IMG/VR virus record: IMGVR_UViG_3300032285_004054
Span: 154,401 to 218,400 of that record
Length of the DNA: 64,000 nucleotides
Reading direction: 5' to 3' (one strand)
In this document: positions 5,033-56,314 of the stretch, piece after piece
How positions within the stretch are numbered: the stretch's first letter is position 1
Layout: each line of letters begins with the position of its first letter
The notes under the pieces: model-generated
The model's input: only the letters and a program-made list of their open reading frames with translations
Told to the model about the DNA's origin: nothing
The model's database searches: none
Made by a program: the position numbers and the translations under genes

Positions 5033-5272
5033 ATGTCTAACGAAGAAGATATCCAGTATATAATTGTAAAAAAATTAGTCTACGTGATAAAAGTAGGGCC
5101 TATTTATTTTTGGGATACAGCTGCTACAAATAAAGCTGAATGTCTTAGAAAAGGTTTACAGTTTTTTAAAGTAGAAAGTGAACATCTTTTAAAAATTAAA
5201 GGTGCTGAATTAATACGTTTATTTACAAAAGAAATTATAGCTCAAGATAATAAATCAAATAAGTCTGTTTGA
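5033..5272 (+). CDS. Hypothetical protein antisense to the replication operon
   Basis: 79 aa ORF with TAAATA at 5014-5019 upstream; overlaps the pol 3' end by 31 bp. Confidence 0.45.
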   Translation: MSNEEDIQYIIVKKLVYVIKVGPIYFWDTAATNKAECLRKGLQFFKVESEHLLKIKGAELIRLFTKEIIAQDNKSNKSV

Positions 5273-14387: not shown

Positions 14388-15435
14388 TTGTTTGTTGTGA
14401 TATTTTATATAGTTCTAAGCATTTATCTAGTATACTTCTTTTATCTACATCAGTTGTTAATAAATTAACAAATTCTTGTAACGCTGTTTCAATGTCGAAA
14501 CTTAAATTTTCTAATTCTTCTCCTTCAACTTGTTTTTCTTCTAAGAGATTAAATTCAGTTCTTAAAGAGAGAGGTTTATACTGCGATATTTTTGTAATAA
14601 TAGAATCAATATGTTGAGCGGTTAATTTGTTATCAACATAAAGACTAACTATATTGTTTCTTACTATCTCCTCAACATTCTTTATAGAACCGTCAAATAT
14701 TTTTGCAGTATTAATTCTCTTATGCTTAGGTGAAAATGTATTTTCAATAAATTCAACATCTAGCGTATCTACATCTAATATCGAAACACCTTTTTGTTGA
14801 TCTCTGTCTCCAAAATCTAACTCATGAGGTGAACCTAGATATAATATACTTTTACCACCAGGGTAGAACCTATGCTCTCTAAAATGAAAATGACCTGATA
14901 TAACTAAATCAGCCTTATCATGTAAAAAGGTATTTTCAAAACCATGCTCACATACTTTATGTTGGTTCATTCTAAAATTAATAATATCAAAATGTCCAAC
15001 TATAACATCACACTTAGGTATACTCTTAGCTTCAGTACCCCAAGGGCAAAATGTAAATGATTTATCTCTAATTTTAAAATTACGTAACTCTTCAAAAACT
15101 GTTACGTTCTTATTATTAAGAATAGAAATCGAATTAACGTCAGATTTATCTTTATAGAAGCAATCATGATTACCAGTTATTGCTACAATATTAAAATCTT
15201 CTAATATATTAAAAAATCTATTCGCAGCATGTATTGTGTTAACACCAATTAAATGTCTATCATGAAAGATATCTCCTGCAATAATAATATCTTTAATATT
15301 GCGTTCAAGTAATGTCGATTTTAACCAATAAGCAAATTTGATAGCTATATCATGCCAGGTCTGCGAGTTTTGATGTACACCTAAGTGTATATCACTTATA
15401 CAGGCTATTTTTGGACCTGTGATATTATTCATCAT
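14380..15435 (-). CDS. 47: Recombination nuclease gp47 (SbcD/Mre11-like)
   Basis: SDIHLG, GDIFH, GNHD, SGHFH metallophosphoesterase motifs. Confidence 0.95.
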   Translation of the reverse strand: MMNNITGPKIACISDIHLGVHQNSQTWHDIAIKFAYWLKSTLLERNIKDIIIAGDIFHDRHLIGVNTIHAANRFFNILEDFNIVAITGNHDCFYKDKSDVNSISILNNKNVTVFEELRNFKIRDKSFTFCPWGTEAKSIPKCDVIVGHFDIINFRMNQHKVCEHGFENTFLHDKADLVISGHFHFREHRFYPGGKSILYLGSPHELDFGDRDQQKGVSILDVDTLDVEFIENTFSPKHKRINTAKIFDGSIKNVEEIVRNNIVSLYVDNKLTAQHIDSIITKISQYKPLSLRTEFNLLEEKQVEGEELENLSFDIETALQEFVNLLTTDVDKRSILDKCLELYKISQQTNE

Positions 15436-15985
15436 TTGTTGCTAGTGAATCGTCATAGTGATCACTACCGTCATCTTCTCTGTGAGCATTTTTCTGATAG
15501 GGTATCTGACCACTCTCTGCTAGTAGTTCATAAACTTCATTTTGATATCTATGAATAGTTTCATGTTCTTTCTTTTCTTTTTTAATTCTATTTTGAAATG
15601 CTCTATAAGCTACTTTTGTAAAGTAAGAAAAAGGATTATACCCGCTATCACACTTAAATCTCTTTCTAGTTAAAGCAGTCATCATCTTAATGATCGCGTC
15701 CCCAATCATTTCTTCCTTATATGAATAGTTAATAAAGTTCTGTGCGTACCCTAGACGTGTACCGATCTTTTGAATCATGTCGGCTAGTTCATTCTTAAGA
15801 TCGTTAGTTTTGTAGTACTCCTTTATAAGATTTTCCATCTCAATCGGGTCAACGTAATTTGGCTTAAGCTCTTCTTTAGTACGTCTGACTCTCTTCTTAC
15901 CTTTTGTAATAGCTTTATCGTCTAGTATTTCATCTAGATCTGGCTCTTCGAATCCGACGAACGCATCTTTTTGTTTTTTAATCAT
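15425..15985 (-). CDS. 55: Late-transcription sigma factor gp55
   Basis: NFINYSYKEEMIGDAI, NPFSYFT, FQNRIKKEKK. Confidence 0.92.
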   Translation of the reverse strand: MIKKQKDAFVGFEEPDLDEILDDKAITKGKKRVRRTKEELKPNYVDPIEMENLIKEYYKTNDLKNELADMIQKIGTRLGYAQNFINYSYKEEMIGDAIIKMMTALTRKRFKCDSGYNPFSYFTKVAYRAFQNRIKKEKKEHETIHRYQNEVYELLAESGQIPYQKNAHREDDGSDHYDDSLATNDE

Positions 15986-35406: not shown

Positions 35407-35407
35407 G

Positions 35408-35479
35408 TGGAATCGATGGGACTCGAACCCATAACCAATAGATTAAAAGTCTACTGCTCTACCATTGAGCTACGATTCC
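35408..35479 (-). tRNA. tRNA-Lys(UUU), CCA not encoded
   Basis: Cloverleaf folded by hand; loop CTTTTAA. Confidence 0.92.
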
Positions 35480-35483
35480 AAAA

Positions 35484-35558
35484 TGGTGCACGATGAGGGG
35501 ATCGAACCCCCGACCTTGTCCGTGTAAAGGACCTGCTCTACCGCTAAGCTAATCGTGC
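35484..35558 (-). tRNA. tRNA-Val(UAC)
   Basis: Loop TTTACAC, CCA encoded. Confidence 0.92.
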
Positions 35559-35564
35559 TAAAAG

Positions 35565-35644
35565 TGCTCATGGAGGGACTTGAACCCCCACCCTTACGGA
35601 CTAGATCCTAAGTCTAGCGCGGCTGCCAATTACGCCACATGAGC
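35565..35644 (-). tRNA. tRNA-Leu(UAG), CCA not encoded
   Basis: Loop CTTAGGA, class II variable arm. Confidence 0.92.
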
Positions 35645-35651
35645 TTTAAAA

Positions 35652-35727
35652 TGGTACATCGGGCAGGGATCGAACCTGCGACCAAGGGTTTAGAAAACCC
35701 CTGCTCTATCCACTGAGCTACCGATGC
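35652..35727 (-). tRNA. tRNA-Arg(UCU)
   Basis: Loop TTTCTAA, CCA encoded. Confidence 0.92.
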
Positions 35728-35731
35728 ATAT

Positions 35732-35902
35732 TTAAGGAAGTTCCTCCTTTGGAGGGTCAATAATATCTTTAATCTCTGCCTGAATACGTTTGATTTCTTC
35801 GTTAAAAGCTTTTGCAGACTGCTTCTTACGATTTTTCATATCGTCAAGATCCTGTACTAGTTGAAATACTCTTGCTTCTTTTGTTGTGTTTGTTTCTTCC
35901 AT
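35732..35902 (-). CDS. Small coiled-coil protein inside the tRNA cluster
   Basis: Manual translation MEETNTTKEARVFQLVQDLDDMKNRKK... (56 aa). Confidence 0.6.
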   Translation of the reverse strand: MEETNTTKEARVFQLVQDLDDMKNRKKQSAKAFNEEIKRIQAEIKDIIDPPKEELP

Positions 35903-35912
35903 AATTTTAAAG

Positions 35913-35988
35913 TGGTGCGCCCGGAGGGATTTGAACCCCCAACCAATCAGTTATGAGCCGACTGCTCTGACCATTGAGCTACAAGCGC
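35913..35988 (-). tRNA. tRNA(CAU), Ile2 or elongator Met
   Basis: Loop CTCATAA, A73, CCA; no initiator GGG/CCC stem. Confidence 0.85.
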
Positions 35989-35998
35989 GTTGTTAAAA

Positions 35999-36074
35999 TG
36001 GTACTCCAGGTCGGATTCGAACCGACACTTGAGGGATTTTAAGTCCCTTGTCTCTGCCGTTGGACTACTGGAGC
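35999..36074 (-). tRNA. tRNA-Leu(UAA) with short variable loop
   Basis: Loop CTTAAAA, 5-nt variable loop, CCA. Confidence 0.85.
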
Positions 36075-36219
36075 GCATAAAAGACATATTAATTACAAAG
36101 CCAAAGGCATTCAAGAAGAAAAATAATAAAACTCAAAATAACTACAATAGTAATAGTCTTTTCGTGATTCCAAAAATTTTGAAACGCAATATAGAGCTGA
36201 TTATTTTTCATATCAAAAA

Positions 36220-36314
36220 TGGTACTGGGTGTGGGAATCGAACCCACGCTCGGCCCTCATCTAGGGCGCCACGATTATAAGTCGTGCGGTGCTCTCCAAT
36301 TACACTAACCCAGT
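36220..36314 (-). tRNA. Atypical long-arm tRNA with UAU anticodon (reads Ile AUA)
   Basis: Acceptor ACTGGGT/ACCCAGT, loop CTTATAA, ~22-nt variable region with GCCCT/AGGGC stem, T-arm GTGGG-TTCGATT-CCCAC, CCA. Confidence 0.82.
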
Positions 36315-37778: not shown

Positions 37779-38174
37779 TTATATACCTTTTGCAGCAGCG
37801 TGGTAACGAGCTCTCTTAGCAACGTCACAAATAGCACTAGAAGCTACAGCAATCTTTTGTAACATCCAGGGCTCAATACTCTCACCAGAAGAGAGAATAT
37901 CATGAAGCTCTTTAGCGTTTGTAAAGAGATCAAAAAGGTTTGTCTTGGCCATTTCTAATTCCTCGCTTTCATGCTCTTCCGGAGACTCTTCACATTCACA
38001 ACCTTCTTCTTCAGGTTCTTCACCTAAATCCATAACAATTACACCAGCATCCTTGCCTTCATCATCCGTTACTTCAACAGGTGTTGTATCATGCTCAATA
38101 TCTGTAGGTTCATTATGATCTTTTTGTCTTGAGGAAATATAAGCCTCAGCAATTAAGCGAAATTCCTTGTCCAT
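37779..38174 (-). CDS. Putative internal virion protein
   Basis: MDKEFRLIAEAY; acidic; PWMLQKI helix. Confidence 0.6.
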   Translation of the reverse strand: MDKEFRLIAEAYISSRQKDHNEPTDIEHDTTPVEVTDDEGKDAGVIVMDLGEEPEEEGCECEESPEEHESEELEMAKTNLFDLFTNAKELHDILSSGESIEPWMLQKIAVASSAICDVAKRARYHAAAKGI

Positions 38175-38175
38175 A

Positions 38176-38541
38176 TTAAGCTACGCTTCCGTCCTCTGGA
38201 CAATTTCCTGTCTCGTGATCTCCGCCACAAGTCGTACAGACCTTAGCGGTTACTTTATCATCTTCGCCGGCTGTACCAGCAACTTCTTCTTTTTCTTTCT
38301 TTGTAAGAAGAGCGTCAAGATCAGCGATGGTCTTACCGTGGTCGTTAACAATCTTAACAATATCTTCTTTTTCGTCCTTAAGCTTTAGATAGTCCTTAGA
38401 ACCGTGCTCAGCTTTAAGTAAGGAACGAACTACTTTGTAGTAACGTCTTGCAAGCTTTTTGTTAACAACTTTATCAGTAGCTGTACCTTCGAGGATGCGC
38501 TGATAAGCTTCCGCTAATAATACTTCATCTTTATTGATCAT
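38176..38541 (-). CDS. Putative internal virion protein with C-terminal Cx2Cx3Hx4C knuckle
   Basis: LLAEAYQRILEG; CTTCGGDHETGNC; TAAATA 6 nt upstream. Confidence 0.6.
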   Translation of the reverse strand: MINKDEVLLAEAYQRILEGTATDKVVNKKLARRYYKVVRSLLKAEHGSKDYLKLKDEKEDIVKIVNDHGKTIADLDALLTKKEKEEVAGTAGEDDKVTAKVCTTCGGDHETGNCPEDGSVA

Positions 38542-38550
38542 ATATTATAT

Positions 38551-38772
38551 TTAATCTTTCCTATGGGACTTCTTCCACCATTTGCACCAGGCACTAGGCT
38601 TAATGTCCCCGCTAACAGCAGAACATTTATTTGGTGATCTCCACATTGTACATTGATCACATCGCTGTCCCTTAACAGTGTGAGCTACATAACCCGCTTC
38701 TGCTTTAGAGTGTTTTGCTTTAGCTTCACTTAACATCTCTAAAGCTAATTTTATAACTTTATCGAAGCTCAT
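38551..38772 (-). CDS. HiPIP-like [4Fe-4S] domain protein with capsid-targeting-like N-terminus
   Basis: AGY...CDQC...C...GDIKPSAWCKWW matches the HiPIP Cys/aromatic pattern. Confidence 0.75.
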   Translation of the reverse strand: MSFDKVIKLALEMLSEAKAKHSKAEAGYVAHTVKGQRCDQCTMWRSPNKCSAVSGDIKPSAWCKWWKKSHRKD

Positions 38773-39203
38773 CCGCCTTGCTGTGCTGCCTTCATATATG
38801 AATGAAGTTGTTCGATATCCTTAGGTATAGCTTTTTTAATAACTTCAGGAATTGGTTTACTTAATAACAATAATGATTGTGCGTAATCTTTAGCTGTATC
38901 TCTATCTTTTGAAATAGCTATAATTTCGTGTGTAGTAAGTTGAGCACCATTTATATATTTACGATACGCTCTTTCAGCGTCATAACGTGTATTATCTTCT
39001 TTTGGTGTGTGAGGTTTGGCAACTTCTTCTGTTTCACCTGGACCTCTAGGGTTAGGCTCTTCAGGGTTTCCAGCAGGTCTAGCTTTAGCAGGATGTGCTA
39101 AACCTAATGAAGCAGCCATGGCTGCAGTTGCCATAGCTTTTGAAAAAGGTCCTTCTTGAACCAATTCATATGCTTCTGTTATTTTTTGTATATCTTTACT
39201 CAT
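38769..39203 (-). CDS. Putative internal virion protein
   Basis: KITEAYELVQEG followed by hydrophobic MATAAMAASLGLA. Confidence 0.55.
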   Translation of the reverse strand: MSKDIQKITEAYELVQEGPFSKAMATAAMAASLGLAHPAKARPAGNPEEPNPRGPGETEEVAKPHTPKEDNTRYDAERAYRKYINGAQLTTHEIIAISKDRDTAKDYAQSLLLLSKPIPEVIKKAIPKDIEQLHSYMKAAQQGG

Positions 39204-39204
39204 A

Positions 39205-39459
39205 TTAATCTTTATTTACTACGCTGTCAAAACCTGCACTCCAGAGATCAGCAGCTTTTTTATTACCGCCTTTATGAGGATTTTCAGGCATAACACCATC
39301 TCTGAGATATCTTCTTCCAGCTAAAGCGCCATGGGCAAAATGATCAGATGCATCTGAGGCTGCGTGATAATCAGTAGGAGTTCTTGACATAAGTTTTTCG
39401 TATTCTTGTCTACTAATAGTATCGTATGCTTCGTTTAAAGCGGTTTCGAATTTCGACAT
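39205..39459 (-). CDS. Putative internal virion protein
   Basis: MSKFETALNEAY; TAAATA 6 nt upstream. Confidence 0.6.
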   Translation of the reverse strand: MSKFETALNEAYDTISRQEYEKLMSRTPTDYHAASDASDHFAHGALAGRRYLRDGVMPENPHKGGNKKAADLWSAGFDSVVNKD

Positions 39460-39482: not shown

Positions 39483-39532
39483 AAAAAAAGAGACGGTAGA
39501 TCAAGAGGCGACCAAGCCCTCAACCTACCGTC
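39483..39532 (-). terminator. Long hairpin followed by a U-tract
   Basis: GACGGTAG/CTACCGTC outer stem, inner GAGG/CCTC stem, T7 on the minus strand. Confidence 0.6.
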
Positions 39533-39578
39533 ATTTTGCTCTTGTTTAACGTCGTAGCGCTAGCCAACTCAGACGGGT

Positions 39579-39800
39579 CTAAGTACGCTCTATGTTTTTG
39601 TAACGTACCCCTCTGCGTTTCCTTAGTAAAGGCTCCGGACTTGAGACCGGCTTAGTAGCATTAATACGATGTTTTAATCTACACATGAATCTATATACAG
39701 TATCCGGATCAGGCAAGCAAAGAAATAAAAATATTATTAATGGAAACCCCATAAAAACCGCTATACCTTCCAGATACTGTAAAATAGCACTCACTAGCAA
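39579..39800 (-). CDS. Small membrane protein
   Basis: One TM helix plus basic tail. Confidence 0.45.
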   Translation of the reverse strand: MLVSAILQYLEGIAVFMGFPLIIFLFLCLPDPDTVYRFMCRLKHRINATKPVSSPEPLLRKRRGVRYKNIERT

Positions 39801-39809
39801 ATAACGATT

Positions 39810-40775
39810 TTACGTTATAGCATCAATTAATCCACCGAAATTTTCTTCGGTCTCCGGATCAATTATACCTTTTAGTAAATCAGATTCTATTGGATAAAGA
39901 TCATTATACTCGACTACATATTTTTCACTTTTATCTTTAGCAAAATCAGGCTCAACAAGAGCTTGTCGTACGCGATGTCTTGCCCAAGGACTCATTTCCA
40001 CAGCTGGTTTAATGTATGTAGCAAGTTCACCTTTCCATAAATTATCTCTATCACTTCTTAAACAAACTCTATCTCCCTCTTTAAGGTTGTTTCTCCATGT
40101 TTCTAAATCAAAATCCTTACTCTCTGTAACACTTAGTAAATCACTAAATGAATCTTTAGTATCTTTTGTTAATGACTTTCTTAATTCCCAATCAATAGGA
40201 AATAATTTACTTAGATTGTATCTAGTATAGCCTTGAGAGCCATCTATATTGTGACCTTCTTTAACAAGTAAAGCAATATCTCTAAAACTATCAACTACTT
40301 CTAAATATGTAGCTTTAAATCCACGGACAGTAAAAGGTCTAACTTCTACCTTATCGCCTTTCTTTAAGTTACTTCGCCAAGTTCTAAGATATTCGTAATC
40401 CTCTTGAGTCTCTTCTGATACTATATCGATTAAATCGCTAAATGAATTTTCTGTATCCTTAGATAGAGAGTTCTTTAATTCATATTTTTTTAAAGCTTTT
40501 TGTACTTTATCGGTTACAACCTTTCTAACTGTATAGTAACTATCAGGTACATGTAAGCTTCTATACCATTCATCAAAATCTTTCATATGAACAAACCAAC
40601 CATTACCTGATTTAGCATCTCTAGTCCATATAGCAGGTTTTCCGTCTATAATAATATCCCAACAAGGATTCCACATCTGACCTCCCATTAAGGTTTCAAA
40701 AGGACCCTTAACAATCTCTACTTTAAGATCATTAGCTCTTCTTAATTCCTCTAATATAAGATCATTAAATCTCAC
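39810..40775 (-). CDS. Tail-family member: three-module fusion
   Basis: MRFNDLILEE start; tails KYELKNSLSKDTENSFSDLIDI, DWELRKSLTKDTKDSFSDLLSV, IDPETEENFGGLIDAIT. Confidence 0.85.
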   Translation of the reverse strand: MRFNDLILEELRRANDLKVEIVKGPFETLMGGQMWNPCWDIIIDGKPAIWTRDAKSGNGWFVHMKDFDEWYRSLHVPDSYYTVRKVVTDKVQKALKKYELKNSLSKDTENSFSDLIDIVSEETQEDYEYLRTWRSNLKKGDKVEVRPFTVRGFKATYLEVVDSFRDIALLVKEGHNIDGSQGYTRYNLSKLFPIDWELRKSLTKDTKDSFSDLLSVTESKDFDLETWRNNLKEGDRVCLRSDRDNLWKGELATYIKPAVEMSPWARHRVRQALVEPDFAKDKSEKYVVEYNDLYPIESDLLKGIIDPETEENFGGLIDAIT

Positions 40776-40914
40776 GGTTTATTATTTATCAATATCTGCT
40801 CTAGCGCGGCGAGGTTTCTCCTAATTTCCCCGCTTAGTGCATCCGTCTCGGCCCCAAAGTTTTTGAAAATATTTTATACTCTAAATTGAATTCCGATTAT
40901 TAATTCTAGGGAAA

Positions 40915-41199
40915 TTAAAGAATATCTAATAGATCTCCGAACGTCTCGCCTGTCTCCTTGGACAGATGCCGCTTTATATTATGATCTTCTATAGCTTTGG
41001 CAATAGCGTTCTTTACTCCTTGCTTCTTATAGAGTTCAAGTCCCCAAACAGTGAGGTATTGGTTAGTCTCCAAATATCTAAAACCATCTGGCTCCTCGCC
41101 TATTGTTAACTTCTGGCCATCTACCTCCACGTCATAGCCTATATAGCCTTCGTCCTTAAGGTCGTAAGGACCTCTTAAGAATTTTACTTTATAAGACAT
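40915..41199 (-). CDS. Tail-family member
   Basis: Ends HLSKETGETFGDLLDIL. Confidence 0.85.
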   Translation of the reverse strand: MSYKVKFLRGPYDLKDEGYIGYDVEVDGQKLTIGEEPDGFRYLETNQYLTVWGLELYKKQGVKNAIAKAIEDHNIKRHLSKETGETFGDLLDIL

Positions 41200-41542
41200 C
41201 TAAGAACCCTCCGAATGAATCTCTTGTTTCTGGAGACATAGCTTGAAGTGTCTCCCAATTCTTAATAGCTTTAGCTACCGGACCGTTTTCAGTATCTTTT
41301 CCATCCCAAAGGTAAATCTCTGGCATATAAAGAACATAAGGGTATTCACCACGTTCTGGAGTATAAATGACAAAACTATTTCGATCTTCCGTATCCTCTT
41401 TAATATGCATTAACCAGGCACCTTCTATATCTTCGGGAAGTGTATAGCCTCGCTTTAGATACTCATTGATCTCTTCATCGGTAGCCCTTCTTAGGACTTT
41501 ATAGAAGTTACCAGACTCTAGAAAGAACTTGTTAAAGGACAT
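41189..41542 (-). CDS. Tail-family member
   Basis: MSFNKFFLES ... MSPETRDSFGGFLDVL. Confidence 0.85.
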   Translation of the reverse strand: MSFNKFFLESGNFYKVLRRATDEEINEYLKRGYTLPEDIEGAWLMHIKEDTEDRNSFVIYTPERGEYPYVLYMPEIYLWDGKDTENGPVAKAIKNWETLQAMSPETRDSFGGFLDVL

Positions 41543-41906
41543 CTAATAAACCTCCAAATGAATCTTTAGTTTCTTTGTCTACACTATTTAAAAGATTATA
41601 ATCTTCTATAGCCTTGTCTATTTGTTCTCTAAACGGATCATCATAGACGTCGGTATGATTGGGGATAATCTTAGGATAGGGAGGTAGCCAATGCCCTCTA
41701 TAATGACCTGGTGGCCAGCAGTAATAGCATATGCACTCCTTGTCCTTATACTTCATTTGTAGCTTATAGACATTCTCTTCCCAATCTTTTATATCCAGCT
41801 CATTACGAAAGAGATGGGTCATTGGTCCCTCAAGTATCTTTACTTCAATTCCTCTATTATCACCGTAATTGATAAGAGCTTCTTTTATTAATCGATCAAA
41901 GTACAT
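41532..41906 (-). CDS. Tail-family member
   Basis: MYFDRLIKEA ... VDKETKDSFGGLLDVL. Confidence 0.85.
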   Translation of the reverse strand: MYFDRLIKEALINYGDNRGIEVKILEGPMTHLFRNELDIKDWEENVYKLQMKYKDKECICYYCWPPGHYRGHWLPPYPKIIPNHTDVYDDPFREQIDKAIEDYNLLNSVDKETKDSFGGLLDVL

Positions 41907-42312
41907 CTAATAATCCTCCAAATGAATCTCTTGTATCTTTACTTAATCCTTGCTTAAAATTCCATTGATCTATAAGAGCTGGAACTGTTTCACGTAACAT
42001 CTTATTAAGGAATTGAGCTCTCGGGGCTGACTTGTGTTGTCTACCGACCATACGTTTAAACCAAGTAGGTGTTTGAATAACAGTATAATAAGCTGTTGTC
42101 TTCTGAAGCTCTCTATCTTTATCCTCTATCTTCTTAACCCACCAAGTACCTCCTTTACTATCCTTTAAACAAAAGACCTCTTTATAGTCTTTATGTGGAG
42201 GTTGTTCAAGATGAAGCTCACCAGTAAGACTATCCATAAAGCCGGTACCTACAACCTTAAATGTTGTATTCATCCAGTCCAGTTCTTCTAATACTAATTG
42301 ATTAAAGTACAT
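41896..42312 (-). CDS. Tail-family member
   Basis: MYFNQLVLEE ... LSKDTRDSFGGLLDVL. Confidence 0.85.
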   Translation of the reverse strand: MYFNQLVLEELDWMNTTFKVVGTGFMDSLTGELHLEQPPHKDYKEVFCLKDSKGGTWWVKKIEDKDRELQKTTAYYTVIQTPTWFKRMVGRQHKSAPRAQFLNKMLRETVPALIDQWNFKQGLSKDTRDSFGGLLDVL

Positions 42313-42664
42313 CTAATAATCCTCCGAATGTTTTCTTTGTATCATTACTTAATAGCTTTCTAAACTCCCAATCATTAATAGCATCAGGAACTAACCCGGA
42401 GAACCCCATAAAGGTTACATCTCCGCTATCATGAATGTTGTAGCTAGTATATCCTTCCTTCTCGTTATCTTTAAACCGTACAACAAGACGCGGCCAATAC
42501 CCAGGTCTATTACCATCATCGTCTACCACCCAGGCACCTTTTATATACTCTTCCCTTACCCAGCGATAGCCATAACCGTATATCCTCTGAAGATCTTCTT
42601 CTGTAGCGTCCCGAACGACGTGATACTTCTCTAAAGCTTCTAATACTATTTGATTAAAGTACAT
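42302..42664 (-). CDS. Tail-family member
   Basis: MYFNQIVLEA ... LSNDTKKTFGGLLDVL. Confidence 0.85.
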   Translation of the reverse strand: MYFNQIVLEALEKYHVVRDATEEDLQRIYGYGYRWVREEYIKGAWVVDDDGNRPGYWPRLVVRFKDNEKEGYTSYNIHDSGDVTFMGFSGLVPDAINDWEFRKLLSNDTKKTFGGLLDVL

Positions 42665-42995
42665 CTAATAATCCTCCGAAAGTTTCTCTTGTATCCTTTG
42701 ATAAGGATTGTTTTAATTCCCAATCTTTCATAGCTTTAATAATAAGGCTATCAAGTGTATCAATATCAATACCGAATAGCTTTTTACATTGATCTCGTTC
42801 ATATACAGCATTATCCGGATCAATTCCTGAAGTATTTAAACCATCGAGATAAAGCATACATTGATCATCTTTGACATAACGAAAGAAACACTTCTTACCA
42901 TTTACAGTTATATTATAATGAAGGTCTCCGATAGCCCAATCTGGAAGATCTTTGTCTTCTATAACATTAATAATCTTAATAGAAGGTTGTTTCAT
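42654..42995 (-). CDS. Tail-family member (no N-terminal CTS)
   Basis: Ends DWELKQSLSKDTRETFGGLLDVL. Confidence 0.85.
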   Translation of the reverse strand: MKQPSIKIINVIEDKDLPDWAIGDLHYNITVNGKKCFFRYVKDDQCMLYLDGLNTSGIDPDNAVYERDQCKKLFGIDIDTLDSLIIKAMKDWELKQSLSKDTRETFGGLLDVL

Positions 42996-43003
42996 ATAGG
43001 CTA

Positions 43004-43540
43004 TTAGAGGGCGTCTAGGAAGTCCTTAAATGATCCTTGAGTCTTAGTATCGGTTTGTCCTAGAGCTAAGAAGTTCTTTTCTTTATGTTTTATCCACCAG
43101 TTTACTAGCTTATCTAGCTTCTCGGCAAATGCGTAATGATAACCTTTCTGCCTCCATACTGGATCCTCTGTATTATTATCATAATGAACGAAGTAACTTA
43201 TATATGGATATAAAACATTCGGTACCCAAGAGGCAGCTGCAGCAATATGGGTAGGTCCTGTTTCATCTTCAAGTCTTCTAGTATCATCAATACAAGTCAT
43301 ATAATATGTCTTTGTATCTGTCCATGTAGCAAGCTCCCTAGTCTTATGTAATATACCATTAGGTTCAGCCTCCTTCGGTAGTCCTTCTTTAATGTCATAT
43401 ATCTCAAAGTTATGAAAGGGCATTGAATCAACCTCATCCGTTGACCAGACCGATCGTTCAAAGCCTTGCTTTCTATCGGGGTTTCTTGATCGAGGTACAT
43501 TAGCTACTAGAGCCTCTTTGAAGTAATCTTTAAATGACAT
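43004..43540 (-). CDS. Tail-family member
   Basis: MSFKDYFKEA ... TDTKTQGSFKDFLDAL. Confidence 0.8.
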   Translation of the reverse strand: MSFKDYFKEALVANVPRSRNPDRKQGFERSVWSTDEVDSMPFHNFEIYDIKEGLPKEAEPNGILHKTRELATWTDTKTYYMTCIDDTRRLEDETGPTHIAAAASWVPNVLYPYISYFVHYDNNTEDPVWRQKGYHYAFAEKLDKLVNWWIKHKEKNFLALGQTDTKTQGSFKDFLDAL

Positions 43541-43877
43541 CGATTAAACCTCCAAATGATTGTTCAGTATCCTTTGATAGATTGTTTTTTAATTCCCAAG
43601 ATATAAGCTGTTTGTATATAGGAAAGTCCGGATAGATATACCCTTCAAAGCCATAATTAGGTAAGCTATACACCATTAAGTTTTCATTGTTAAGATCTTC
43701 AAATAAGTCCTTACAACGTATGACTAGAACATCAGATACATCGGTATAGTTTCTAATTACCCATCCTCTAGTTAATTTTAAATCCTCATCATATTGAGAA
43801 GATAAACCATCGAGTATTTTCTGAGGAGCTAATTCTATCTTCTCCTTCTTTGATTCGTAGAATAACTTAAATGACAT
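43530..43877 (-). CDS. Tail-family member
   Basis: MSFKLFYES ... LSKDTEQSFGGLIDVI. Confidence 0.85.
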   Translation of the reverse strand: MSFKLFYESKKEKIELAPQKILDGLSSQYDEDLKLTRGWVIRNYTDVSDVLVIRCKDLFEDLNNENLMVYSLPNYGFEGYIYPDFPIYKQLISWELKNNLSKDTEQSFGGLIDVI

Positions 43878-44265
43878 CTAGTAGCCCTCCGAAAGTATCT
43901 CTTGTCTTATCTGGTAGATGCCTCCTTTGTTCAAAGTCATCTATAGCCTTAACTACTCTCCTACCTTCTTCTCTATAGGCTGGTATATCCCGCTCGGTAA
44001 AGGCACCACATCTATCCATACCTTCTAAAGTATAAACATCATAACCTTTTACATACGTAATAGATCTTATAGCAATATATCTAGCAATATATCTATCAGT
44101 TCCTGATTCCTTCTTTATAGTAAGAAGATAGAGAGGGTCATCTTTTCTCCAAGGATACTTCCTACGAAAGACCCCCTCATACCCCTCAGGCACTGCTTCT
44201 ACAGTTATATTATCTCTTTGAAGCTTATAAGGCTCTTTAGATTCGTAGAATAACTTAAATGACAT
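43867..44265 (-). CDS. Tail-family member
   Basis: MSFKLFYES ... LPDKTRDTFGGLLDVI. Confidence 0.85.
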   Translation of the reverse strand: MSFKLFYESKEPYKLQRDNITVEAVPEGYEGVFRRKYPWRKDDPLYLLTIKKESGTDRYIARYIAIRSITYVKGYDVYTLEGMDRCGAFTERDIPAYREEGRRVVKAIDDFEQRRHLPDKTRDTFGGLLDVI

Positions 44266-44608
44266 CTAATAGACCTCCAAATGAATCTTTAGTATCGTCT
44301 GATAGATTATTTTTAAACTCCCATTTCTTAATAGCTTTAGCAAGAGGTGAGTTTATATCCTCATGACTAATAAGGTCAATAGTGTTAGGGTCTAATGTGT
44401 AAATTGAATATGTCTTCCAGTCAGGAATATATGCTACAATAACCTGTCCTTCATCATAGTCATCGTTCATATAAACGATCCATGCCTGTTCAATATCTCC
44501 CTTCTCCGTATCAAGATCTCTTGTAAGATCTTTAAGTTCTTTCTTTGTAAATCTTCTAAGAACTTTGTATGAGTCGTTTGACTCTGTAAAAAATTGTTTA
44601 AATGACAT
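44255..44608 (-). CDS. Tail-family member (first in the array)
   Basis: MSFKQFFTES ... LSDDTKDSFGGLLDVI. Confidence 0.85.
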   Translation of the reverse strand: MSFKQFFTESNDSYKVLRRFTKKELKDLTRDLDTEKGDIEQAWIVYMNDDYDEGQVIVAYIPDWKTYSIYTLDPNTIDLISHEDINSPLAKAIKKWEFKNNLSDDTKDSFGGLLDVI

Positions 44609-52121: not shown

Positions 52122-52195
52122 TGGCTACCCCTCATGGATTCGAACCATGACAAAGAGAGCCAAAATCTCTTGTGCTACCGTTACACTAAAGGGTA
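52122..52195 (-). tRNA. tRNA-Gln(UUG)
   Basis: U1-A72, loop TTTTGGC, CCA. Confidence 0.9.
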
Positions 52196-52199
52196 AGAA

Positions 52200-52274
52200 T
52201 GGCTCCCGAGGCTGGATTCGAACCAACAACATGCGAGTTAACAGCTCGCTGCTCTACCGTTGAGCTACTCGGGA
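52200..52274 (-). tRNA. tRNA-Asn(GUU)
   Basis: Loop CTGTTAA, G73, CCA. Confidence 0.93.
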
Positions 52275-52280
52275 ACAATT

Positions 52281-52363
52281 TGGGCAGAGAAGGACTCGAA
52301 CCTTCGAAGGCGAATGCCAAAGGATTTACAGTCCTCCCCGTTTGACCGCTTCGGTATCTACCC
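52281..52363 (-). tRNA. tRNA-Tyr(GUA), CCA not encoded
   Basis: Loop CTGTAAA, long variable arm. Confidence 0.92.
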
Positions 52364-52414
52364 GTATTGCTTATACAATTTATAATAGACATAGATATAG
52401 TCAAGAGAATAAAA

Positions 52415-52489
52415 TGGCATCCTCAAGGGGATTTGAACCCCTGCTAGGTCCGTGAAAGGGACCGGTGCTAACCGCTACACTATGAGGAC
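52415..52489 (-). tRNA. tRNA-Glu(UUC)
   Basis: Loop CTTTCAC, CCA. Confidence 0.92.
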
Positions 52490-52982: not shown

Positions 52983-53288
52983 TTAAATGATACCCAAGAG
53001 ACCTTCAAATGAGTCTTTTGTTTCCGGTGATAGATTCTTCATTATATTATATCTCTCTATCGCCTTTAATCCTTCTTCTTCTATATCTTTGAATATATTA
53101 ACCGATGTTGCCAGCCCCAGTAATGGCTTATATTTTGTTGGTACCTTTAAGAACGCTAGATATGATCTCTTTTTACCTTTTTCTAAAACAAATTGCCAGG
53201 TATTACCTTCATTATCTTTCATCTCATACCCTGGTTCCCTTCTCTTTCCTACTATCTTATACTCTACATCTGTAAATGTTAATGACAT
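52983..53288 (-). CDS. Tail-family member
   Basis: Ends RYNIMKNLSPETKDSFEGLLGII. Confidence 0.8.
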   Translation of the reverse strand: MSLTFTDVEYKIVGKRREPGYEMKDNEGNTWQFVLEKGKKRSYLAFLKVPTKYKPLLGLATSVNIFKDIEEEGLKAIERYNIMKNLSPETKDSFEGLLGII

Positions 53289-53291
53289 AAC

Positions 53292-53423
53292 CTATTCCTT
53301 TACGCAATTATTAACTACCCTCCCGGATGGTAGCTTCTTTGTTCCTTTCTTCTTATATCCCTTCCAACAATGCATTTGCTTCTTTTCGGTTAATATAGCT
53401 TTTACAATTTTATCAAAATTCAT
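53292..53423 (-). CDS. 43-aa CTS-bearing peptide with CWKGY...NCVK motif
   Basis: Manual translation MNFDKIVKAILTEKKQMHCWKGYKKKGTKKLPSGRVVNNCVKE. Confidence 0.7.
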   Translation of the reverse strand: MNFDKIVKAILTEKKQMHCWKGYKKKGTKKLPSGRVVNNCVKE

Positions 53424-53432
53424 ATACTCTAT

Positions 53433-53786
53433 TTATACAACATCAATAAAGCTACCGAACGTTTCTTTTGTATCATCGGACATATGCTTTTCTAATTCAA
53501 ATCTATTATATTCCTTTTTTACTAGATCTCTAATATACTTTTCTAGTTCCTTACGATCTGGAGATAATGTATCTTTTGATATCCCAGGGATCTTACTACT
53601 CAATGAATAGCCTATATCCTTATCAAATCCATCATTTGTCCCATAGATACCCATCTTCTCACCATTTATATAAACATCGGCTAGTACCGTCCATATCTTA
53701 GAACTAGTACTGGGACGAATCTTTACAGCAATATCCAATCCTGCAAAGCCTTCATTGAGTATACTCTCTACTAGATCCTGGAACAT
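53433..53786 (-). CDS. Tail-family member
   Basis: MFQDLVESILNEG ... MSDDTKETFGSFIDVV. Confidence 0.8.
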   Translation of the reverse strand: MFQDLVESILNEGFAGLDIAVKIRPSTSSKIWTVLADVYINGEKMGIYGTNDGFDKDIGYSLSSKIPGISKDTLSPDRKELEKYIRDLVKKEYNRFELEKHMSDDTKETFGSFIDVV

Positions 53787-53811
53787 ATATTATACTTATT
53801 AAATAATACAC

Positions 53812-54222
53812 ATGTCATTTAGTCAATTAGTTCTGGAAACCCTAGATGAATACCGAGTCATCGGGGATGCCTCCCATCATGCTATCAATATGGCTATGCG
53901 GTACTTTACCGCCGGGATCAAGGATACTGATAAGATCTTCACCCAACCTATTGAACATGGATGGCTTTTGAATGTACGAGGGGATAAGATTTATGTATTC
54001 CCTAATTACTTTATAGGTATGATGGATCCAGGTGATTCAGATTACGTCGTCTTTAATGATCAATATAACTTCATTAACCGTTCAACCAATCGTGTTAATA
54101 ATCCAAAGGGAGTTATTGATAATAGAAAGATAAAGAAAGCGATTGAGAATTGGGAGATGCTTAAGTCAGTATCCCCAGATACTAAATCCTCATTCGAAGA
54201 CTTATTAGGTACTATATCCTAA
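53812..54222 (+). CDS. Tail-family member
   Basis: MSFSQLVLET ... NWEMLKSVSPDTKSSFEDLLGTIS. Confidence 0.8.
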   Translation: MSFSQLVLETLDEYRVIGDASHHAINMAMRYFTAGIKDTDKIFTQPIEHGWLLNVRGDKIYVFPNYFIGMMDPGDSDYVVFNDQYNFINRSTNRVNNPKGVIDNRKIKKAIENWEMLKSVSPDTKSSFEDLLGTIS

Positions 54223-54566
54223 CCGATCAGCTTCTCCAGTAGCATTCTACTGTTAACCTTAATATCACACTCCAAGGCGTCTCTAGATTCAATAGCCTTA
54301 AAGTACTCTTCGTCATTATCAATCAGTTCCTGACCTAACGTCTTCTTAACATCTGGATTGAGCTTTGATTTGATCAGTTCCAGGATTGGCTCCACATCTT
54401 TATCTGATAGATGGAGGGTAACTTCGGAGCCATCATATACGGAACCATAATTGAATTCCAGCTTTAGAGTAACCGGAGGACATGGACTATAACCAAATGG
54501 TTGACCAGTAAAGTCGGAGAAGTAACTTGCCTCCTCTATCTGTTCAGGAACGATTATCTTTTTCAT
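54219..54566 (-). CDS. Hypothetical protein
   Basis: 115 aa, coupled to the second queD. Confidence 0.55.
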   Translation of the reverse strand: MKKIIVPEQIEEASYFSDFTGQPFGYSPCPPVTLKLEFNYGSVYDGSEVTLHLSDKDVEPILELIKSKLNPDVKKTLGQELIDNDEEYFKAIESRDALECDIKVNSRMLLEKLIG

Positions 54567-55129
54567 AGTTTTCGATCATCATATTCAACAACACCCTTTT
54601 CGTCTCTATAAAGCTCAATTAGGTATTTGTTTCCAATATAGAAGTTAGAACGTTCATCTTGAGAAATAGAATCTCTATTACAATCGGTATAACAATTAGG
54701 CGTCTCATATAGACGAACATTCTCAATCCAAAGATTAGGATACTTGTTAAAGAGAATATCCATAGCCAGGAATACTTCTTTAGCAATATTCTCTACCGAT
54801 GGATTGCAGTAATTACCTGGACCATTCAATGTCATAATCCAGAGCTTGGTACCTAAATCATTAACAGCCTTGATGAGTGTCCTATCATGACAATTGAGAA
54901 TAGCTCCATGATCGAGCTTATCATCAATCCATTGACATCCTACTCTCTTAATCTCCTTGAAGTCTACAGCATATCCGATCTCTTCAATTGTATCAAAGCC
55001 AAAGGTTAGTTCATAAAGATATGTATGCCCATGAACATGAAAGCATTTCATCCGCTCATTCATTACCCGATGCATTACATCGAACGATCCCTTTCTAGTA
55101 ATAGTCTGTTTAGTACTCATACTCTTCAT
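54563..55129 (-). CDS. queD: Second QueD/PTPS-family enzyme (canonical H...CxxxHGH)
   Basis: MHRV...KCFHVHGHTY, VDFKEIK, DH, NPSVENIA, LYETP. Confidence 0.88.
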   Translation of the reverse strand: MKSMSTKQTITRKGSFDVMHRVMNERMKCFHVHGHTYLYELTFGFDTIEEIGYAVDFKEIKRVGCQWIDDKLDHGAILNCHDRTLIKAVNDLGTKLWIMTLNGPGNYCNPSVENIAKEVFLAMDILFNKYPNLWIENVRLYETPNCYTDCNRDSISQDERSNFYIGNKYLIELYRDEKGVVEYDDRKL

Positions 55130-55336
55130 CTATTATAGATTCAACCCTTTTGAAATCAATAATAATAGGTATTTGCAGGGAGATCCTACTATTCCTTCAA
55201 ATAAACCCTGAATTCCCCATTATTCAACACTTATTTCGACGTTGAATATCAACGACTTACGACAGCAAAAGCACGTATATTATTTATTGAAAAATCCTTT
55301 GTTTTTTACAGATTTCCCCTAAAAATCACTACTTTT

Positions 55337-55612
55337 TCACAGAATTCCCACAAAATCCTGGAAATTCTCCTGTGTTTTCTCTGATAATTCCTTAATAATA
55401 CTATAGTTTTTCGGGAACATTTTACAGATTTCCGCTACTTGATCCCTGTCTGTTGAACCATCCTGGTAACGAACATCTATCTTACACATTAAACTACTAG
55501 GGAATATAGTTTGCATTTCCGTTACTTGTACGGTCATAATTCTTCCGTCATAGTAATAATCAAACCAGTCCCCAGGCTTGAGATTACTAACAAATGATAG
55601 GTTATCGAACAT
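55337..55612 (-). CDS. Tail-family member under an early-type promoter
   Basis: Ends LSEKTQENFQDFVGIL; TTGAAC-17-TAGTAT-6-ATG. Confidence 0.7.
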   Translation of the reverse strand: MFDNLSFVSNLKPGDWFDYYYDGRIMTVQVTEMQTIFPSSLMCKIDVRYQDGSTDRDQVAEICKMFPKNYSIIKELSEKTQENFQDFVGIL

Positions 55613-55667
55613 GAATATATACTAGAGGAATTTGATTTATAGTTCAACTATAAAATAAATATAACCG

Positions 55668-55991
55668 ATGAACTTCGAGGATCTTGTTGTAGAGGCTATA
55701 CATAACAAATATGTTAAGTTTGATATAGAGATTCTTAGTGGTCCTTACCCTGGTGAACATTACGGGTGGTTGGAAGAGTGTCAAGTATACAAAGCAAGAA
55801 TTTTTGATAATACAAACGTTCAATTAATCTATCAACCGAGTAGGGATTATGTTGGTGCGAAGAATTTTGACGTCTGGTGGTTTGGTCGGGAGGCTGGATT
55901 TGACGAACAGGCCAAAGCAGCTATAATAAAATACAATATGTCAAAGGAAGCTAAGGGATCATTTGGTGACTTCTTAGACGCCATATCATGA
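55668..55991 (+). CDS. Tail-family member
   Basis: MNFEDLVVEA ... MSKEAKGSFGDFLDAIS. Confidence 0.8.
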   Translation: MNFEDLVVEAIHNKYVKFDIEILSGPYPGEHYGWLEECQVYKARIFDNTNVQLIYQPSRDYVGAKNFDVWWFGREAGFDEQAKAAIIKYNMSKEAKGSFGDFLDAIS

Positions 55992-56314
55992 GCTTAAACG
56001 TAGAAATAATTCCCAGAAGAACGTACGATACAAGTTACGGATTCAAGCGTTACAGTTGTAAGATATCCGGATCTGTAGACGGAATTGATATCAATAATGC
56101 ACTACCTTGGCAGAAAGGTGTCTTCCAAGTAGAAATATGGCATAATGGCTCCTGTCGACTACCTGCTTTAGATCAAGTTCCAGAGATTCCCTACCCTAAA
56201 ACCTATCACAAGTTTTGTGCTGAAGTTAAGAAAGCTATTGAAGACCAGGAGCTAATATCCTCACTATCGCCGGAAACAGGCGATGCTTTCAAAGACCTTA
56301 TTAGTATAACTTAG
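55988..56314 (+). CDS. Tail-family member
   Basis: Ends LSPETGDAFKDLISIT. Confidence 0.78.
   Translation: MSLNVEIIPRRTYDTSYGFKRYSCKISGSVDGIDINNALPWQKGVFQVEIWHNGSCRLPALDQVPEIPYPKTYHKFCAEVKKAIEDQELISSLSPETGDAFKDLISIT

What the first reader, a model, noticed from the sequence alone, without database searches (positions are those of the whole stretch)
39810..40775. Three-cassette polyprotein with internal tails followed by protease-like sites
Seen: the 321-aa ORF contains two internal tails (SFSDLIDIVSE/ET; SFSDLLSVTE/SK) and a terminal one. Modules 2 and 3 are SH3/KOW-like paralogues (TWRSNLKKGDKVEV; TWRNNLKEGDRVCL). Established: T4 gp21 cuts after hydrophobic-X-Glu. Inference: where the stop was lost, the tail runs into V-x-E, so the prohead protease could release three effectors. 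The tail (SFxxLL) also resembles the N-terminal CTS (SFxxF/L), suggesting the tail is a C-terminal version of the core-binding helix.
Basis: partly seen in the sequence, partly recalled or inferred. Interest (0 to 1): 0.66.

Follow-up and report, generated by a model that had tools for sequence, protein, structure and literature searches.

The report
Three fused phage cargo cassettes
One late gene of an uncultured T4-like phage fuses three members of a 24-gene family of small proteins that share a 32-residue tail; each internal tail runs into a glutamate site of the kind T4-type head proteases cut, so it may be a polyprotein of head cargo, but neither cutting nor packaging is shown.

Summary
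Window 39810-40775, on the minus strand, is one 321-codon ORF with three copies of a 32-residue tail (profile E 9e-14, 1e-11, 5e-10). The tail defines a family of 24 genes and 26 tails in this 218-kb T4-like phage. Every other tail ends 0-1 residue before a stop. Module 1 has a stand-alone paralogue three genes upstream. Modules 2 and 3 belong to a cassette subfamily that in related phages is a stand-alone gene with its own N-terminal leader.

Some findings bear on the protease idea. All seven internal tails known (two here, five in relatives) run into hydrophobic-x-Glu followed by Ser, Ala or Glu, while terminal tails of the same lineages keep Asp. The ORF is its own unit, with a late-type promoter motif 7 nt before the start and a strong terminator. 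A leader-like N-terminus also occurs on the scaffold-like protein and the gp21-like protease.

One caveat: the Gly-Gly of the tail is the GGAGG ribosome site of the next, overlapping gene.

Cleavage, packaging and the tail's partner remain untested. The SH3/KOW fold and the tail-leader likeness are only weakly supported. Verdict: a real three-cassette fusion, and plausibly (about 0.4) a prohead-processed cargo polyprotein.

The parts
40783..40790 (-). Late-type promoter motif (G-ATAAATA), 7 nt upstream of the GTG start.
   Evidence: Sequence. ATAAATA lies 2-25 nt before a start codon in 50 of 83 genome occurrences and TTAAATA in 25 of 80, against 3 of 80 for GTAAATA. It precedes the scaffold, protease and large tail genes. 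A gp55-like late sigma factor is encoded at window 15425-15985.
39810..40775 (-). 321-aa ORF: an in-frame fusion of three cassettes (GTG start; stop at 39810-39812).
   Evidence: No in-frame start codon lies near the module borders.
40749..40775 (-). N-terminal leader, residues 1-9, ending Ile-Leu-Glu. It resembles the T4 capsid-targeting sequence in pattern.
   Evidence: The pattern M-x-h-x-x-h-h-x-[ED] occurs in 13 of 311 ORFs: 10 family members, the scaffold-like protein, the gp21-like protease and one 63-aa ORF. The pattern was loosened after the scaffold had been seen.
40419..40775 (-). Module 1 (residues 1-119). Its core is a paralogue of the 138-aa gene at window 41896-42312. Tail 1 is at 40419-40514.
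   Evidence: 31% identity over 89 aa, phmmer E 1e-4; tail E 9e-14.
40413..40421 (-). Junction 1: Val-Ser-Glu (residues 119-121), then Glu. Candidate cleavage site.
   Evidence: Inference from the T4 gp21 rule L/I-X-E (PMC9026906).
40125..40418 (-). Module 2 (residues 120-217), with no leader of its own. Tail 2 is at 40125-40220.
   Evidence: Subfamily alignments A2 and A3; tail E 1.2e-11; AlphaFold2 model pLDDT 66.
40122..40130 (-). Junction 2: Val-Thr-Glu (residues 216-218), then Ser. Candidate cleavage site.
39813..40124 (-). Module 3 (residues 218-321). Terminal tail 3 is at 39813-39908. Its Gly-Gly is coded GGT GGA, not GGAGG.
39485..39532 (-). Intrinsic terminator about 280 nt after the stop: a hairpin of about 17 pairs followed by a U run.
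   Evidence: Folding of 39485-39615 gives -46.4 kcal/mol, z -3.2; 1 of 200 shuffles folds as well.
40915..44608 (-). Upstream tandem array of 10 stand-alone family genes. Eight junctions overlap by 11 nt, with a tail-coded GGAGG and the next gene's ATG inside the Asp-Val codons.
   Evidence: TTAAATA lies 21 nt before the first gene.
52983..56314 (.). Six further family genes on both strands: 52983-53288, 53433-53786, 53812-54222, 55337-55612, 55668-55991, 55988-56314.

Best explanation
The ORF is an in-frame fusion of three cassettes from a phage-specific multigene family. Each cassette is a variable core of 60-110 aa plus a conserved 32-residue C-terminal module: an amphipathic helix, then Leu-Ser-x-[Asp/Glu]-Thr, then [Ser/Thr]-Phe-x-[Gly/Asp]-Leu-Leu-Asp-Val-Leu. 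Shown: the three-cassette anatomy, the existence of stand-alone relatives of each cassette type, and protein-level conservation of the tail. Inferred: the gene is transcribed late from its own promoter motif as a monocistronic unit. Inferred: the product enters the prohead core, through the N-terminal leader that resembles the start of the scaffold-like and protease proteins, through the tails, or both. Inferred: the gp21-like Glu-specific prohead protease removes the 9-residue leader and cuts after Glu121 and Glu218. That would release three acidic proteins of about 11-13 kDa, each ending in a tail, which stay in the head and enter the host with the DNA as T4 internal proteins and Alt do. On this reading a terminal tail keeps Asp, which in the T4 targeting sequence allows targeting but blocks cutting, while an internal tail needs a Glu. 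What the tail binds is unknown.
For: Anatomy: three tails at E 9e-14 to 5e-10. Module 1 has a paralogue at window 41896-42312. Modules 2 and 3 fall in a subfamily of 13 stand-alone genes, most with their own leader.

Tail under protein-level selection: synonymous codon variation. The tail is kept in genes with no downstream overlap and in other phages.

Glu sites: 7 of 7 internal tails run into h-x-E followed by Ser, Ala or Glu, while terminal tails in the same contigs end Asp-x or Leu-Ser. Glu is 5.4% of residues, which gives a chance of roughly 0.24 per junction. That is about 5e-5 for seven junctions, or about 3e-3 if only four are independent.

Protease: a gp21 homologue, PHROG E 1e-58, 34% identical to T4 gp21. 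The conserved MCP N-terminus carries Cys-Phe-Glu then Ala/Ser where T4 gp23 is cut.

Timing: [A/T]TAAATA precedes this ORF, both arrays, and the scaffold, protease and tail genes. A terminator follows.

Leader: it is shared with the scaffold-like protein and the protease.

Literature: gp21 cuts after L/I-X-E; Asp at P1 blocks processing but not targeting; Alt and gp21 have C-terminal propeptides (PMC9026906). The SPN3US protease's C-terminal propeptide is proposed to target it to the prohead (PMC7411985).
Against: There is no proteomic, expression or structural evidence, and no RNA run holds the locus.

The two sites here have Val at P3, not Leu/Ile. Four other [LIV]-x-E motifs lie inside the cores.

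The late-type motif also precedes CobS/CobT-like genes, so it does not prove virion association.

Eight family members lack the leader. One tail-bearing protein is a deoxyribonucleotidase-like enzyme.

The family is mostly acidic, pI 4.5-5.7. From memory, T4 IPII and IPIII are basic.

The leader pattern was widened after the scaffold N-terminus had been seen.

The tail profile does not hit the scaffold, protease or MCP of this phage.

Part of the tail's conservation (Gly-Gly, Asp-Val) is explained by the embedded ribosome site and start codon.
Confidence: 0.4

Rival explanations
1. The product is an uncleaved three-domain protein. The fusion simply joins three cassettes, and the internal tails serve as linkers or as extra copies of a binding motif, so one polypeptide carries three tails. 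The Glu residues after the tails are linker composition.
For: Nothing shows cleavage. The segments after the junctions are acid-rich, which raises the chance of a Glu. The AlphaFold2 model of module 2 predicts the tail as helices with moderate confidence rather than a free peptide. Multidomain 'polyvalent' phage proteins that stay intact are known, for example the N4 virion RNA polymerase (PMC5512222).
Against: 45 of 52 tails found sit 0-1 residue from a C-terminus, which suggests the free end matters. Seven of seven internal tails gain a Glu in a protease-like context, including Asp-to-Glu changes inside the tail itself.
Confidence: 0.3
2. The tail is a short C-terminal docking motif for a partner outside the capsid: a phage replication hub such as the sliding clamp or gp32, or a host protein. 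On this reading the family is cytoplasmic, and the fusion is a multivalent binder or an accident.
For: Hydrophobic-acidic C-termini are used this way in T4-type phages. T4 gp43 ends in Ser-Leu-Asp-Phe-Leu-Phe-Gly. This phage's polymerase, RNase H-like and gp32-like proteins also end in Leu/Asp-rich tails. A tail-bearing deoxyribonucleotidase-like enzyme fits a metabolic or replication complex better than capsid cargo.
Against: The tail profile gives no hit to the polymerase, RNase H or gp32 C-termini. The conserved unit is 32 residues, far longer than clamp-binding peptides. The family units carry late-type promoter motifs, which the replication genes lack. This reading does not explain the Glu after every internal tail. 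No clamp gene could be identified to test it.
Confidence: 0.15
3. The fusion is a recent accident or a decaying gene. The tail's conservation mainly reflects the RNA signals it encodes (ribosome site, start and stop of the next gene), so internal tails are leftovers without a role.
For: GGAGG is coded by the Gly-Gly of all 14 tails that have a downstream overlapping ATG, and by no tail without one. The ORF starts with GTG and has no clear ribosome site. Both internal tails have lost Gly-Gly and one has lost the Asp.
Against: 321 open codons in a 36% G+C genome. The ORF has its own promoter motif and terminator. Tails without any downstream gene keep the helix and the Thr, Phe and Leu-Leu positions with different codons. 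Multi-cassette fusions recur in other lineages.
Confidence: 0.1

Closest known systems
T4 internal proteins IPI, IPII, IPIII and Alt, with the N-terminal capsid targeting sequence
   Same: Small, highly variable proteins in tandem loci near tRNA genes of a T4-type phage. They share a short N-terminal leader of the form aromatic-x-x-hydrophobic-hydrophobic-x-Glu. A gp21-type Glu-specific prohead protease is encoded in the genome. Alt and gp21 show that C-terminal propeptides exist (PMC9026906).
   Different: No sequence homology to T4 IPs; there are no Pfam or PHROG hits. The universal mark here is a 32-residue C-terminal tail, which T4 IPs lack, and a third of the members lack the leader. The family has 24 members. 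Several cassettes can be fused in one ORF. Packaging and cleavage are untested.
Polyvalent proteins of phages and conjugative elements (Iyer et al. 2017, PMC5512222)
   Same: Several independent modules in one polypeptide. They are proposed to be packaged, delivered with the DNA and, in many cases, cut into units.
   Different: Polyvalent proteins are large and built from recognisable enzymatic or anti-defence domains, and usually carry their own metallopeptidase. This ORF is 321 aa, made of three orphan modules of one family, and has no peptidase. Cutting would be in trans, by the prohead protease.
C-terminal shell-binding signals: encapsulin cargo-loading peptides, and the coat-binding C-terminal helix-turn-helix of P22-type scaffolding proteins (from general knowledge)
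   Same: A short conserved C-terminal element attached to otherwise unrelated cargo. It is needed at or near the free C-terminus, in a system with an HK97-fold shell.
   Different: No sequence similarity was tested or found, and the partner of the tail is unknown. This is an analogy of design, not a membership claim.
Processed head proteins of giant phages (phiKZ, 201phi2-1, SPN3US)
   Same: Paralogous head and ejection proteins cut after Glu by gp21-like proteases. The protease's C-terminal propeptide is proposed as a prohead-targeting signal (PMC9026906, PMC7411985).
   Different: There the removed parts are long N-terminal propeptides and the motif is Ser/Ala/Gly-x-Glu. No shared C-terminal tail family and no cassette fusions of this kind were described in the texts read.

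Membership tests
T4-type internal (ejection) proteins with a capsid targeting sequence | N-terminal leader of 10-19 residues with targeting aromatic/hydrophobic positions, ending in L/I-X-E. | tested here: met
   Residues 1-9 end Ile-Leu-Glu. The pattern is shared by 10 family members, the scaffold-like protein and the protease. This is pattern likeness only.
T4-type internal (ejection) proteins with a capsid targeting sequence | Sequence homology to known IP or Alt families. | tested here: not met
   No Pfam, PHROG, phage-GenBank or ESM Atlas match.
T4-type internal (ejection) proteins with a capsid targeting sequence | Cleaved by the prohead protease, present in the mature head, and ejected. 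| not testable with these tools
   Uncultured phage; no RNA or protein data.
T4-type internal (ejection) proteins with a capsid targeting sequence | Late expression together with the head genes. | tested here: inconclusive
   The late-type motif lies 7 nt before the start and before most family units, but it also precedes non-structural genes.
Polyvalent proteins (PMC5512222) | Two or more distinct effector domains in one polypeptide. | tested here: inconclusive
   Three modules are present, but all belong to one orphan family and none has a known domain.
Polyvalent proteins (PMC5512222) | Embedded peptidase (MPTase) or other signature domains of the class. | tested here: not met
   No Pfam hit above cut-off.
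SH3/KOW-like small beta-barrel (modules 2 and 3) | Five-stranded small barrel recognisable by fold comparison. | tested here: inconclusive
   Model pLDDT 66, with only two short strands. Foldseek finds no hit. VIA-align Z is at most 3.8, though Tudor, SH3, chromo and KOW entries dominate the list. Pfam hits to PUA and AbrB-like families are only E 0.04-0.05.
Sliding-clamp-binding C-terminal peptides of T4-type phages | Likeness to the C-terminus of the phage's own polymerase. | tested here: not met
   The tail profile gives no hit to the polymerase or RNase H C-termini. Only a loose hydrophobic-Asp-hydrophobic likeness is visible by eye.
Sliding-clamp-binding C-terminal peptides of T4-type phages | Binding to the clamp. 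| not tested
   No clamp gene could be identified.
Tail-bearing cassette family of this phage lineage (defined here) | The 32-residue C-terminal module matches the family profile. | tested here: met
   Three matches in the ORF. 26 matches in the genome. About 14 further proteins among 1.84 billion representatives.

The most novel reading that the evidence does not exclude
The tail is a natural, portable C-terminal capsid-loading tag of a T4-type phage: a non-cleavable (Asp) counterpart of the N-terminal targeting leader. It lets about two dozen unrelated cargo modules be loaded into the head. The tail-coding DNA also carries the ribosome site, start and stop of the next gene, making a standard junction at which cassettes can be swapped or fused. 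Fused cassettes are resolved by the prohead protease through an Asp-to-Glu switch at the tail end.
Probability: 0.2. Interest if true: 0.8.

Novelty: new variant of a known kind. Interest (0 to 1): 0.6.

Why it matters
If the reading is right, this phage carries a large, fast-evolving arsenal of injected proteins marked by a C-terminal tag no one has described, and it sometimes ships several as one polyprotein that the head protease resolves. That would extend the T4 internal-protein model from three or four proteins with an N-terminal tag to a modular cassette system. It would give a second, C-terminal handle for loading foreign proteins into T4-type heads, and point to about 24 candidate host-takeover or anti-defence proteins in an abundant uncultured phage lineage (more than 7,800 capsid homologues). 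Whatever the function, the junction is a clear example of dual coding: 11 overlapping bases plus an in-tail GGAGG fix both protein ends and the translation signals.

Tried and rejected
- One complex prediction (capsid protein alignment A4 with tail alignment A1) returned 'no answer': no support and no evidence against. It is not used anywhere in the argument.
- AlphaFold2 on the whole ORF without an alignment gave pLDDT 37 and was discarded.
- The ESM Atlas feature search gave only scores below 0.8.
- megablast and tblastn against GenBank phages found nothing for the locus or the ORF.
- A degenerate DNA pattern of the junction found only the same phage and one chance match without tails.
- The sigma-70 promoter scan showed no excess over shuffles. 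Rfam found only tRNAs.
- The sliding clamp could not be found with the two Pfam clamp models, phmmer with T4 gp45, or PHROGs on the best candidate, genome 149666-150406. The clamp-binding rival therefore stayed untested.
- Eye-level likenesses of the tail to T4 gp22 residues 28-44, to the scaffold C-terminus and to the protease C-terminal extension were considered. T4 gp22 is the top hit of the tail profile in 20 kb of T4, but at only 8.9 bits, E 0.03 for that small set. This phage's own scaffold and protease do not score. I treat these as leads only.
- The genome search on relatives of a virus record, and on an ENA locus, was not possible.
The test was redone from stored files.
- Read laying was not used, because no RNA run and only one DNA run hold the locus.
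- No other genetic code was invoked.

Full report
**What is at the coordinates.** The plus-strand translation of 39810-40775 is full of stops. The minus strand carries one ORF of 321 codons, from a GTG at 40775 to a stop at 39812-39810. The window is the last 64 kb of a single 218,400-bp virus record with 36% G+C, rated complete by CheckV. It encodes T4-type replication and head genes:
- a DNA polymerase only about 34% identical to any GenBank phage;
- UvsX, gp46-like, helicase and primase proteins;
- a gp55-like late sigma factor, a gp23-like capsid protein and a gp21-like prohead protease.

The protease is 34% identical to T4 gp21. The capsid protein has more than 7,800 metagenomic homologues, the best at 77-84% identity, so the lineage is abundant but uncultured.

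**The tail family.** A motif scan and then an HMM of the last 32 residues show 26 tails in 24 genes of this genome, 17 of them in the window.
- Twenty-four tails end 0-1 residue before a stop. The only internal ones are the two in this ORF.
- The three tails of the ORF score E 9e-14, 1.2e-11 and 4.8e-10.
- The conserved unit is an amphipathic helix, then Leu-Ser-x-[Asp/Glu]-Thr, then [Ser/Thr]-Phe-x-[Gly/Asp]-Leu-Leu-Asp-Val-Leu.
- Cores are unrelated, or related only within small subfamilies.
- No Pfam or PHROG family matches.
- Two larger proteins also carry the tail: a 662-aa protein with leucine-rich-type repeats and a leader, and a 322-aa protein with a deoxyribonucleotidase-like domain.

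**Dual coding at the junctions.** In the arrays, neighbouring genes overlap by 11 nt. The Asp-Val codons of the tail contain the next gene's ATG, and the last tail codon plus the stop give the next protein's third residue, Phe. All 14 tails whose Gly-Gly is coded GGA-GGN, which reads GGAGG, have a downstream overlapping ATG. Tails with no downstream gene have Lys-Gly, Glu-Asp, Ser-Asp and the like at those two positions. So Gly-Gly is largely a ribosome site. The rest of the tail is kept with varying codons, in genes without overlap and in other phages, so it is selected as protein.

**The three modules.**
- Module 1 (residues 1-119) has the family's N-terminal leader. Its core is 31% identical to the 138-aa gene three genes upstream.
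- Modules 2 and 3 resemble each other directly only over about 35 residues (E about 6e-5).
- A profile of modules 2 and 3 with three relatives recovers 13 stand-alone proteins of 111-146 aa at E 3e-30 to 2e-6. Most of these have their own leader, then the shared Trp-Arg ... Lys-x-Gly-Asp-x-Val core, then a tail.

Modules 2 and 3 are therefore cassettes that elsewhere are separate genes. Here they have no leader and no start codon, so they can be made only as part of the fusion.

**Fold of modules 2 and 3.** An AlphaFold2 model of module 2 built with that alignment reaches pLDDT 66. Foldseek finds nothing. VIA-align gives Z of at most 3.8, below the tool's noise bar, although Tudor, SH3, chromo and KOW barrels fill the list. 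The SH3/KOW label is a weak hint at best.

**Distribution.** A profile search of 1.84 billion representatives found 33 proteins at E <= 1e-3. About 14 come from other metagenomic phages. All are small with the tail at the very end, except two two-cassette proteins of 248 and 245 aa. Their contigs, and others fetched, show the same arrays with 11-nt overlaps and more fusions. One relative is a scaffold of 213,773 bp. Five IMG/VR relatives with capsid identity of 66-79%, each 27-66% complete, have no tail match, while the same search finds 26 in the own genome. The family therefore seems confined to a narrow subclade.

**Evidence bearing on cleavage.** Seven internal tails are now known: two here, one in each of the two-cassette proteins, two in their neighbours, and one weaker case whose upstream cassette is truncated.
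- All seven run into hydrophobic-x-Glu followed by Ser, Ala or Glu.
- In four of them the Glu replaces the tail's conserved Asp or is inserted at its end, whereas terminal tails on the same contigs lack it.
- With Glu at 5.4% of residues and about five eligible positions, the chance is roughly 0.24 per junction. That gives about 5e-5 for seven junctions, or about 3e-3 if only four are independent.

The literature agrees in kind (PMC9026906). T4 gp21 cuts after L/I-X-E. An Asp at the cut position of the targeting sequence blocks processing but not targeting. Alt and gp21 have C-terminal propeptides. The SPN3US protease's C-terminal propeptide is proposed to target it into the prohead (PMC7411985).

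There are limits. The two sites in this ORF have Val at P3, and four other [LIV]-x-Glu motifs lie inside the cores.

**Evidence bearing on head association.**
- The motif [A/T]TAAATA lies 2-25 nt before a start in 75 of 163 occurrences, against 3 of 80 for a control. It precedes the scaffold, the protease, the head-tail adaptor and the large tail genes, but not the replication genes.
- It lies 7 nt before this ORF's GTG, before the first gene of both arrays and before several single family genes. A CTAAATA variant precedes the 662-aa protein.
- A strong hairpin with a U run follows the ORF (z -3.2), so the ORF is a unit of its own.
- The leader pattern occurs in 13 of 311 ORFs: ten family members, the scaffold-like protein, the protease and one small ORF. 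I widened that pattern after seeing the scaffold, so it is suggestive only.

Against head association, the motif also precedes CobS/CobT-like genes, the family is acidic, and a third of the members lack the leader.

**Tail versus leader.** A matrix built from 28 leaders places the median tail at the 88th percentile of random windows, and a quarter of tails above the 95th. One Asp-to-Glu internal tail exceeds the 99th. The leader's first residues are partly dictated by the overlap.

**Verdict.** The three-cassette fusion is certain. Processing by the prohead protease into three tail-ended head proteins is the best-supported mechanism, at about 0.4. An uncleaved multidomain protein comes next at about 0.3. 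A docking tail for a partner outside the capsid (about 0.15) and a functionless recent fusion (about 0.1) follow. The closest known systems are the T4 internal proteins and Alt, and the polyvalent proteins of PMC5512222. The ORF works like the former on my reading, but it fails homology-based membership in both.

Noticed in passing
window 37779-39459, minus strand (genes 37779-38174, 38176-38541, 38769-39203, 39205-39459); also genome 40439-41929: A second set of small genes directly downstream starts with a different shared leader that ends hydrophobic-x-Glu-Ala-Tyr at residues 8-12. It is closer in spacing to the T4 capsid targeting sequence than the family leader is. One has a C-terminal Cys-x-x-Cys ... 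Cys motif. A homologue sits next to a tail cassette in a relative (L022:855-1199). TTAAATA precedes two of them.
   Followed up: partly
window 40915-44608 and genome 7368-9572: Gene junctions in the arrays overlap by 11 nt, and the tail's Gly-Gly codons spell GGAGG 8 nt before the next ATG. One stretch of DNA thus fixes a protein C-terminus, a ribosome site, a start codon, a stop codon and the next protein's first three residues. It is a ready-made junction for cassette exchange.
   Followed up: yes
genome 37945-39933 (L002:17945-19933, minus): A 662-aa protein with the family leader, about ten leucine-rich-type repeats and the tail. It is the last gene of a run that begins with CobT-like and CobS-like ATPase genes carrying late-type motifs. 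A relative (L020) also has its cassette array right after DUF2201 and AAA_5 genes.
   Followed up: partly
genome 49178-50146 (L003:9178-10146, minus): A 322-aa protein with an N-terminal 5'-3' deoxyribonucleotidase-like domain (PHROG E 8e-15) and the tail. It overlaps an upstream 79-aa gene that has the late-type motif.
   Followed up: no
whole genome; for example window 40783-40790: The late-type promoter motif [A/T]TAAATA sits only 2-25 nt (mostly 4-14 nt) before start codons of about 75 genes. That implies very short or absent 5' leaders on late mRNAs.
   Followed up: partly
window 39485-39615, minus strand: A G+C-rich structured 3' region after the ORF (z -3.2) ends in a long terminator hairpin. 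The 73-aa TTG ORF at 39579-39800 inside this region is probably not a gene.
   Followed up: partly
window 40786-40870, minus strand: A G+C-rich stretch (about 40-42% in a 29-36% background) lies between the array and the ORF's promoter motif. It does not fold better than shuffles (z -0.2), and its role is unknown.
   Followed up: partly
window 35407-36314 and 52122-52489: Two clusters hold 11 tRNA genes in total (Lys, Val, Leu x2, Arg, Met, Ile; Gln, Asn, Tyr, Glu), all on the minus strand, flanking the cassette region.
   Followed up: no
window 5242-7785 (polymerase), genome 79339-80238 (RNase H-like), genome 151739-152617 (gp32-like): These replication proteins end in short Leu/Asp-rich C-termini, reminiscent of the T4 gp43 clamp-binding end. 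No sliding-clamp gene could be recognised. The best guess is an unannotated 246-aa ORF at genome 149666-150406.
   Followed up: partly
L012 and L013 (Logan SRR28926313): In this related lineage four of the five cassette ORFs seen are multi-cassette fusions with all-helical cores. Fusion may be the rule there rather than the exception.
   Followed up: partly
genome 106935-108404 (capsid protein), alignment A4: The N-terminal 54 residues of the capsid protein are nearly invariant across 27 homologues. They end in Trp-Cys-Phe-Glu followed by Ala/Ser, a likely maturation site comparable in position to the T4 gp23 cut.
   Followed up: no
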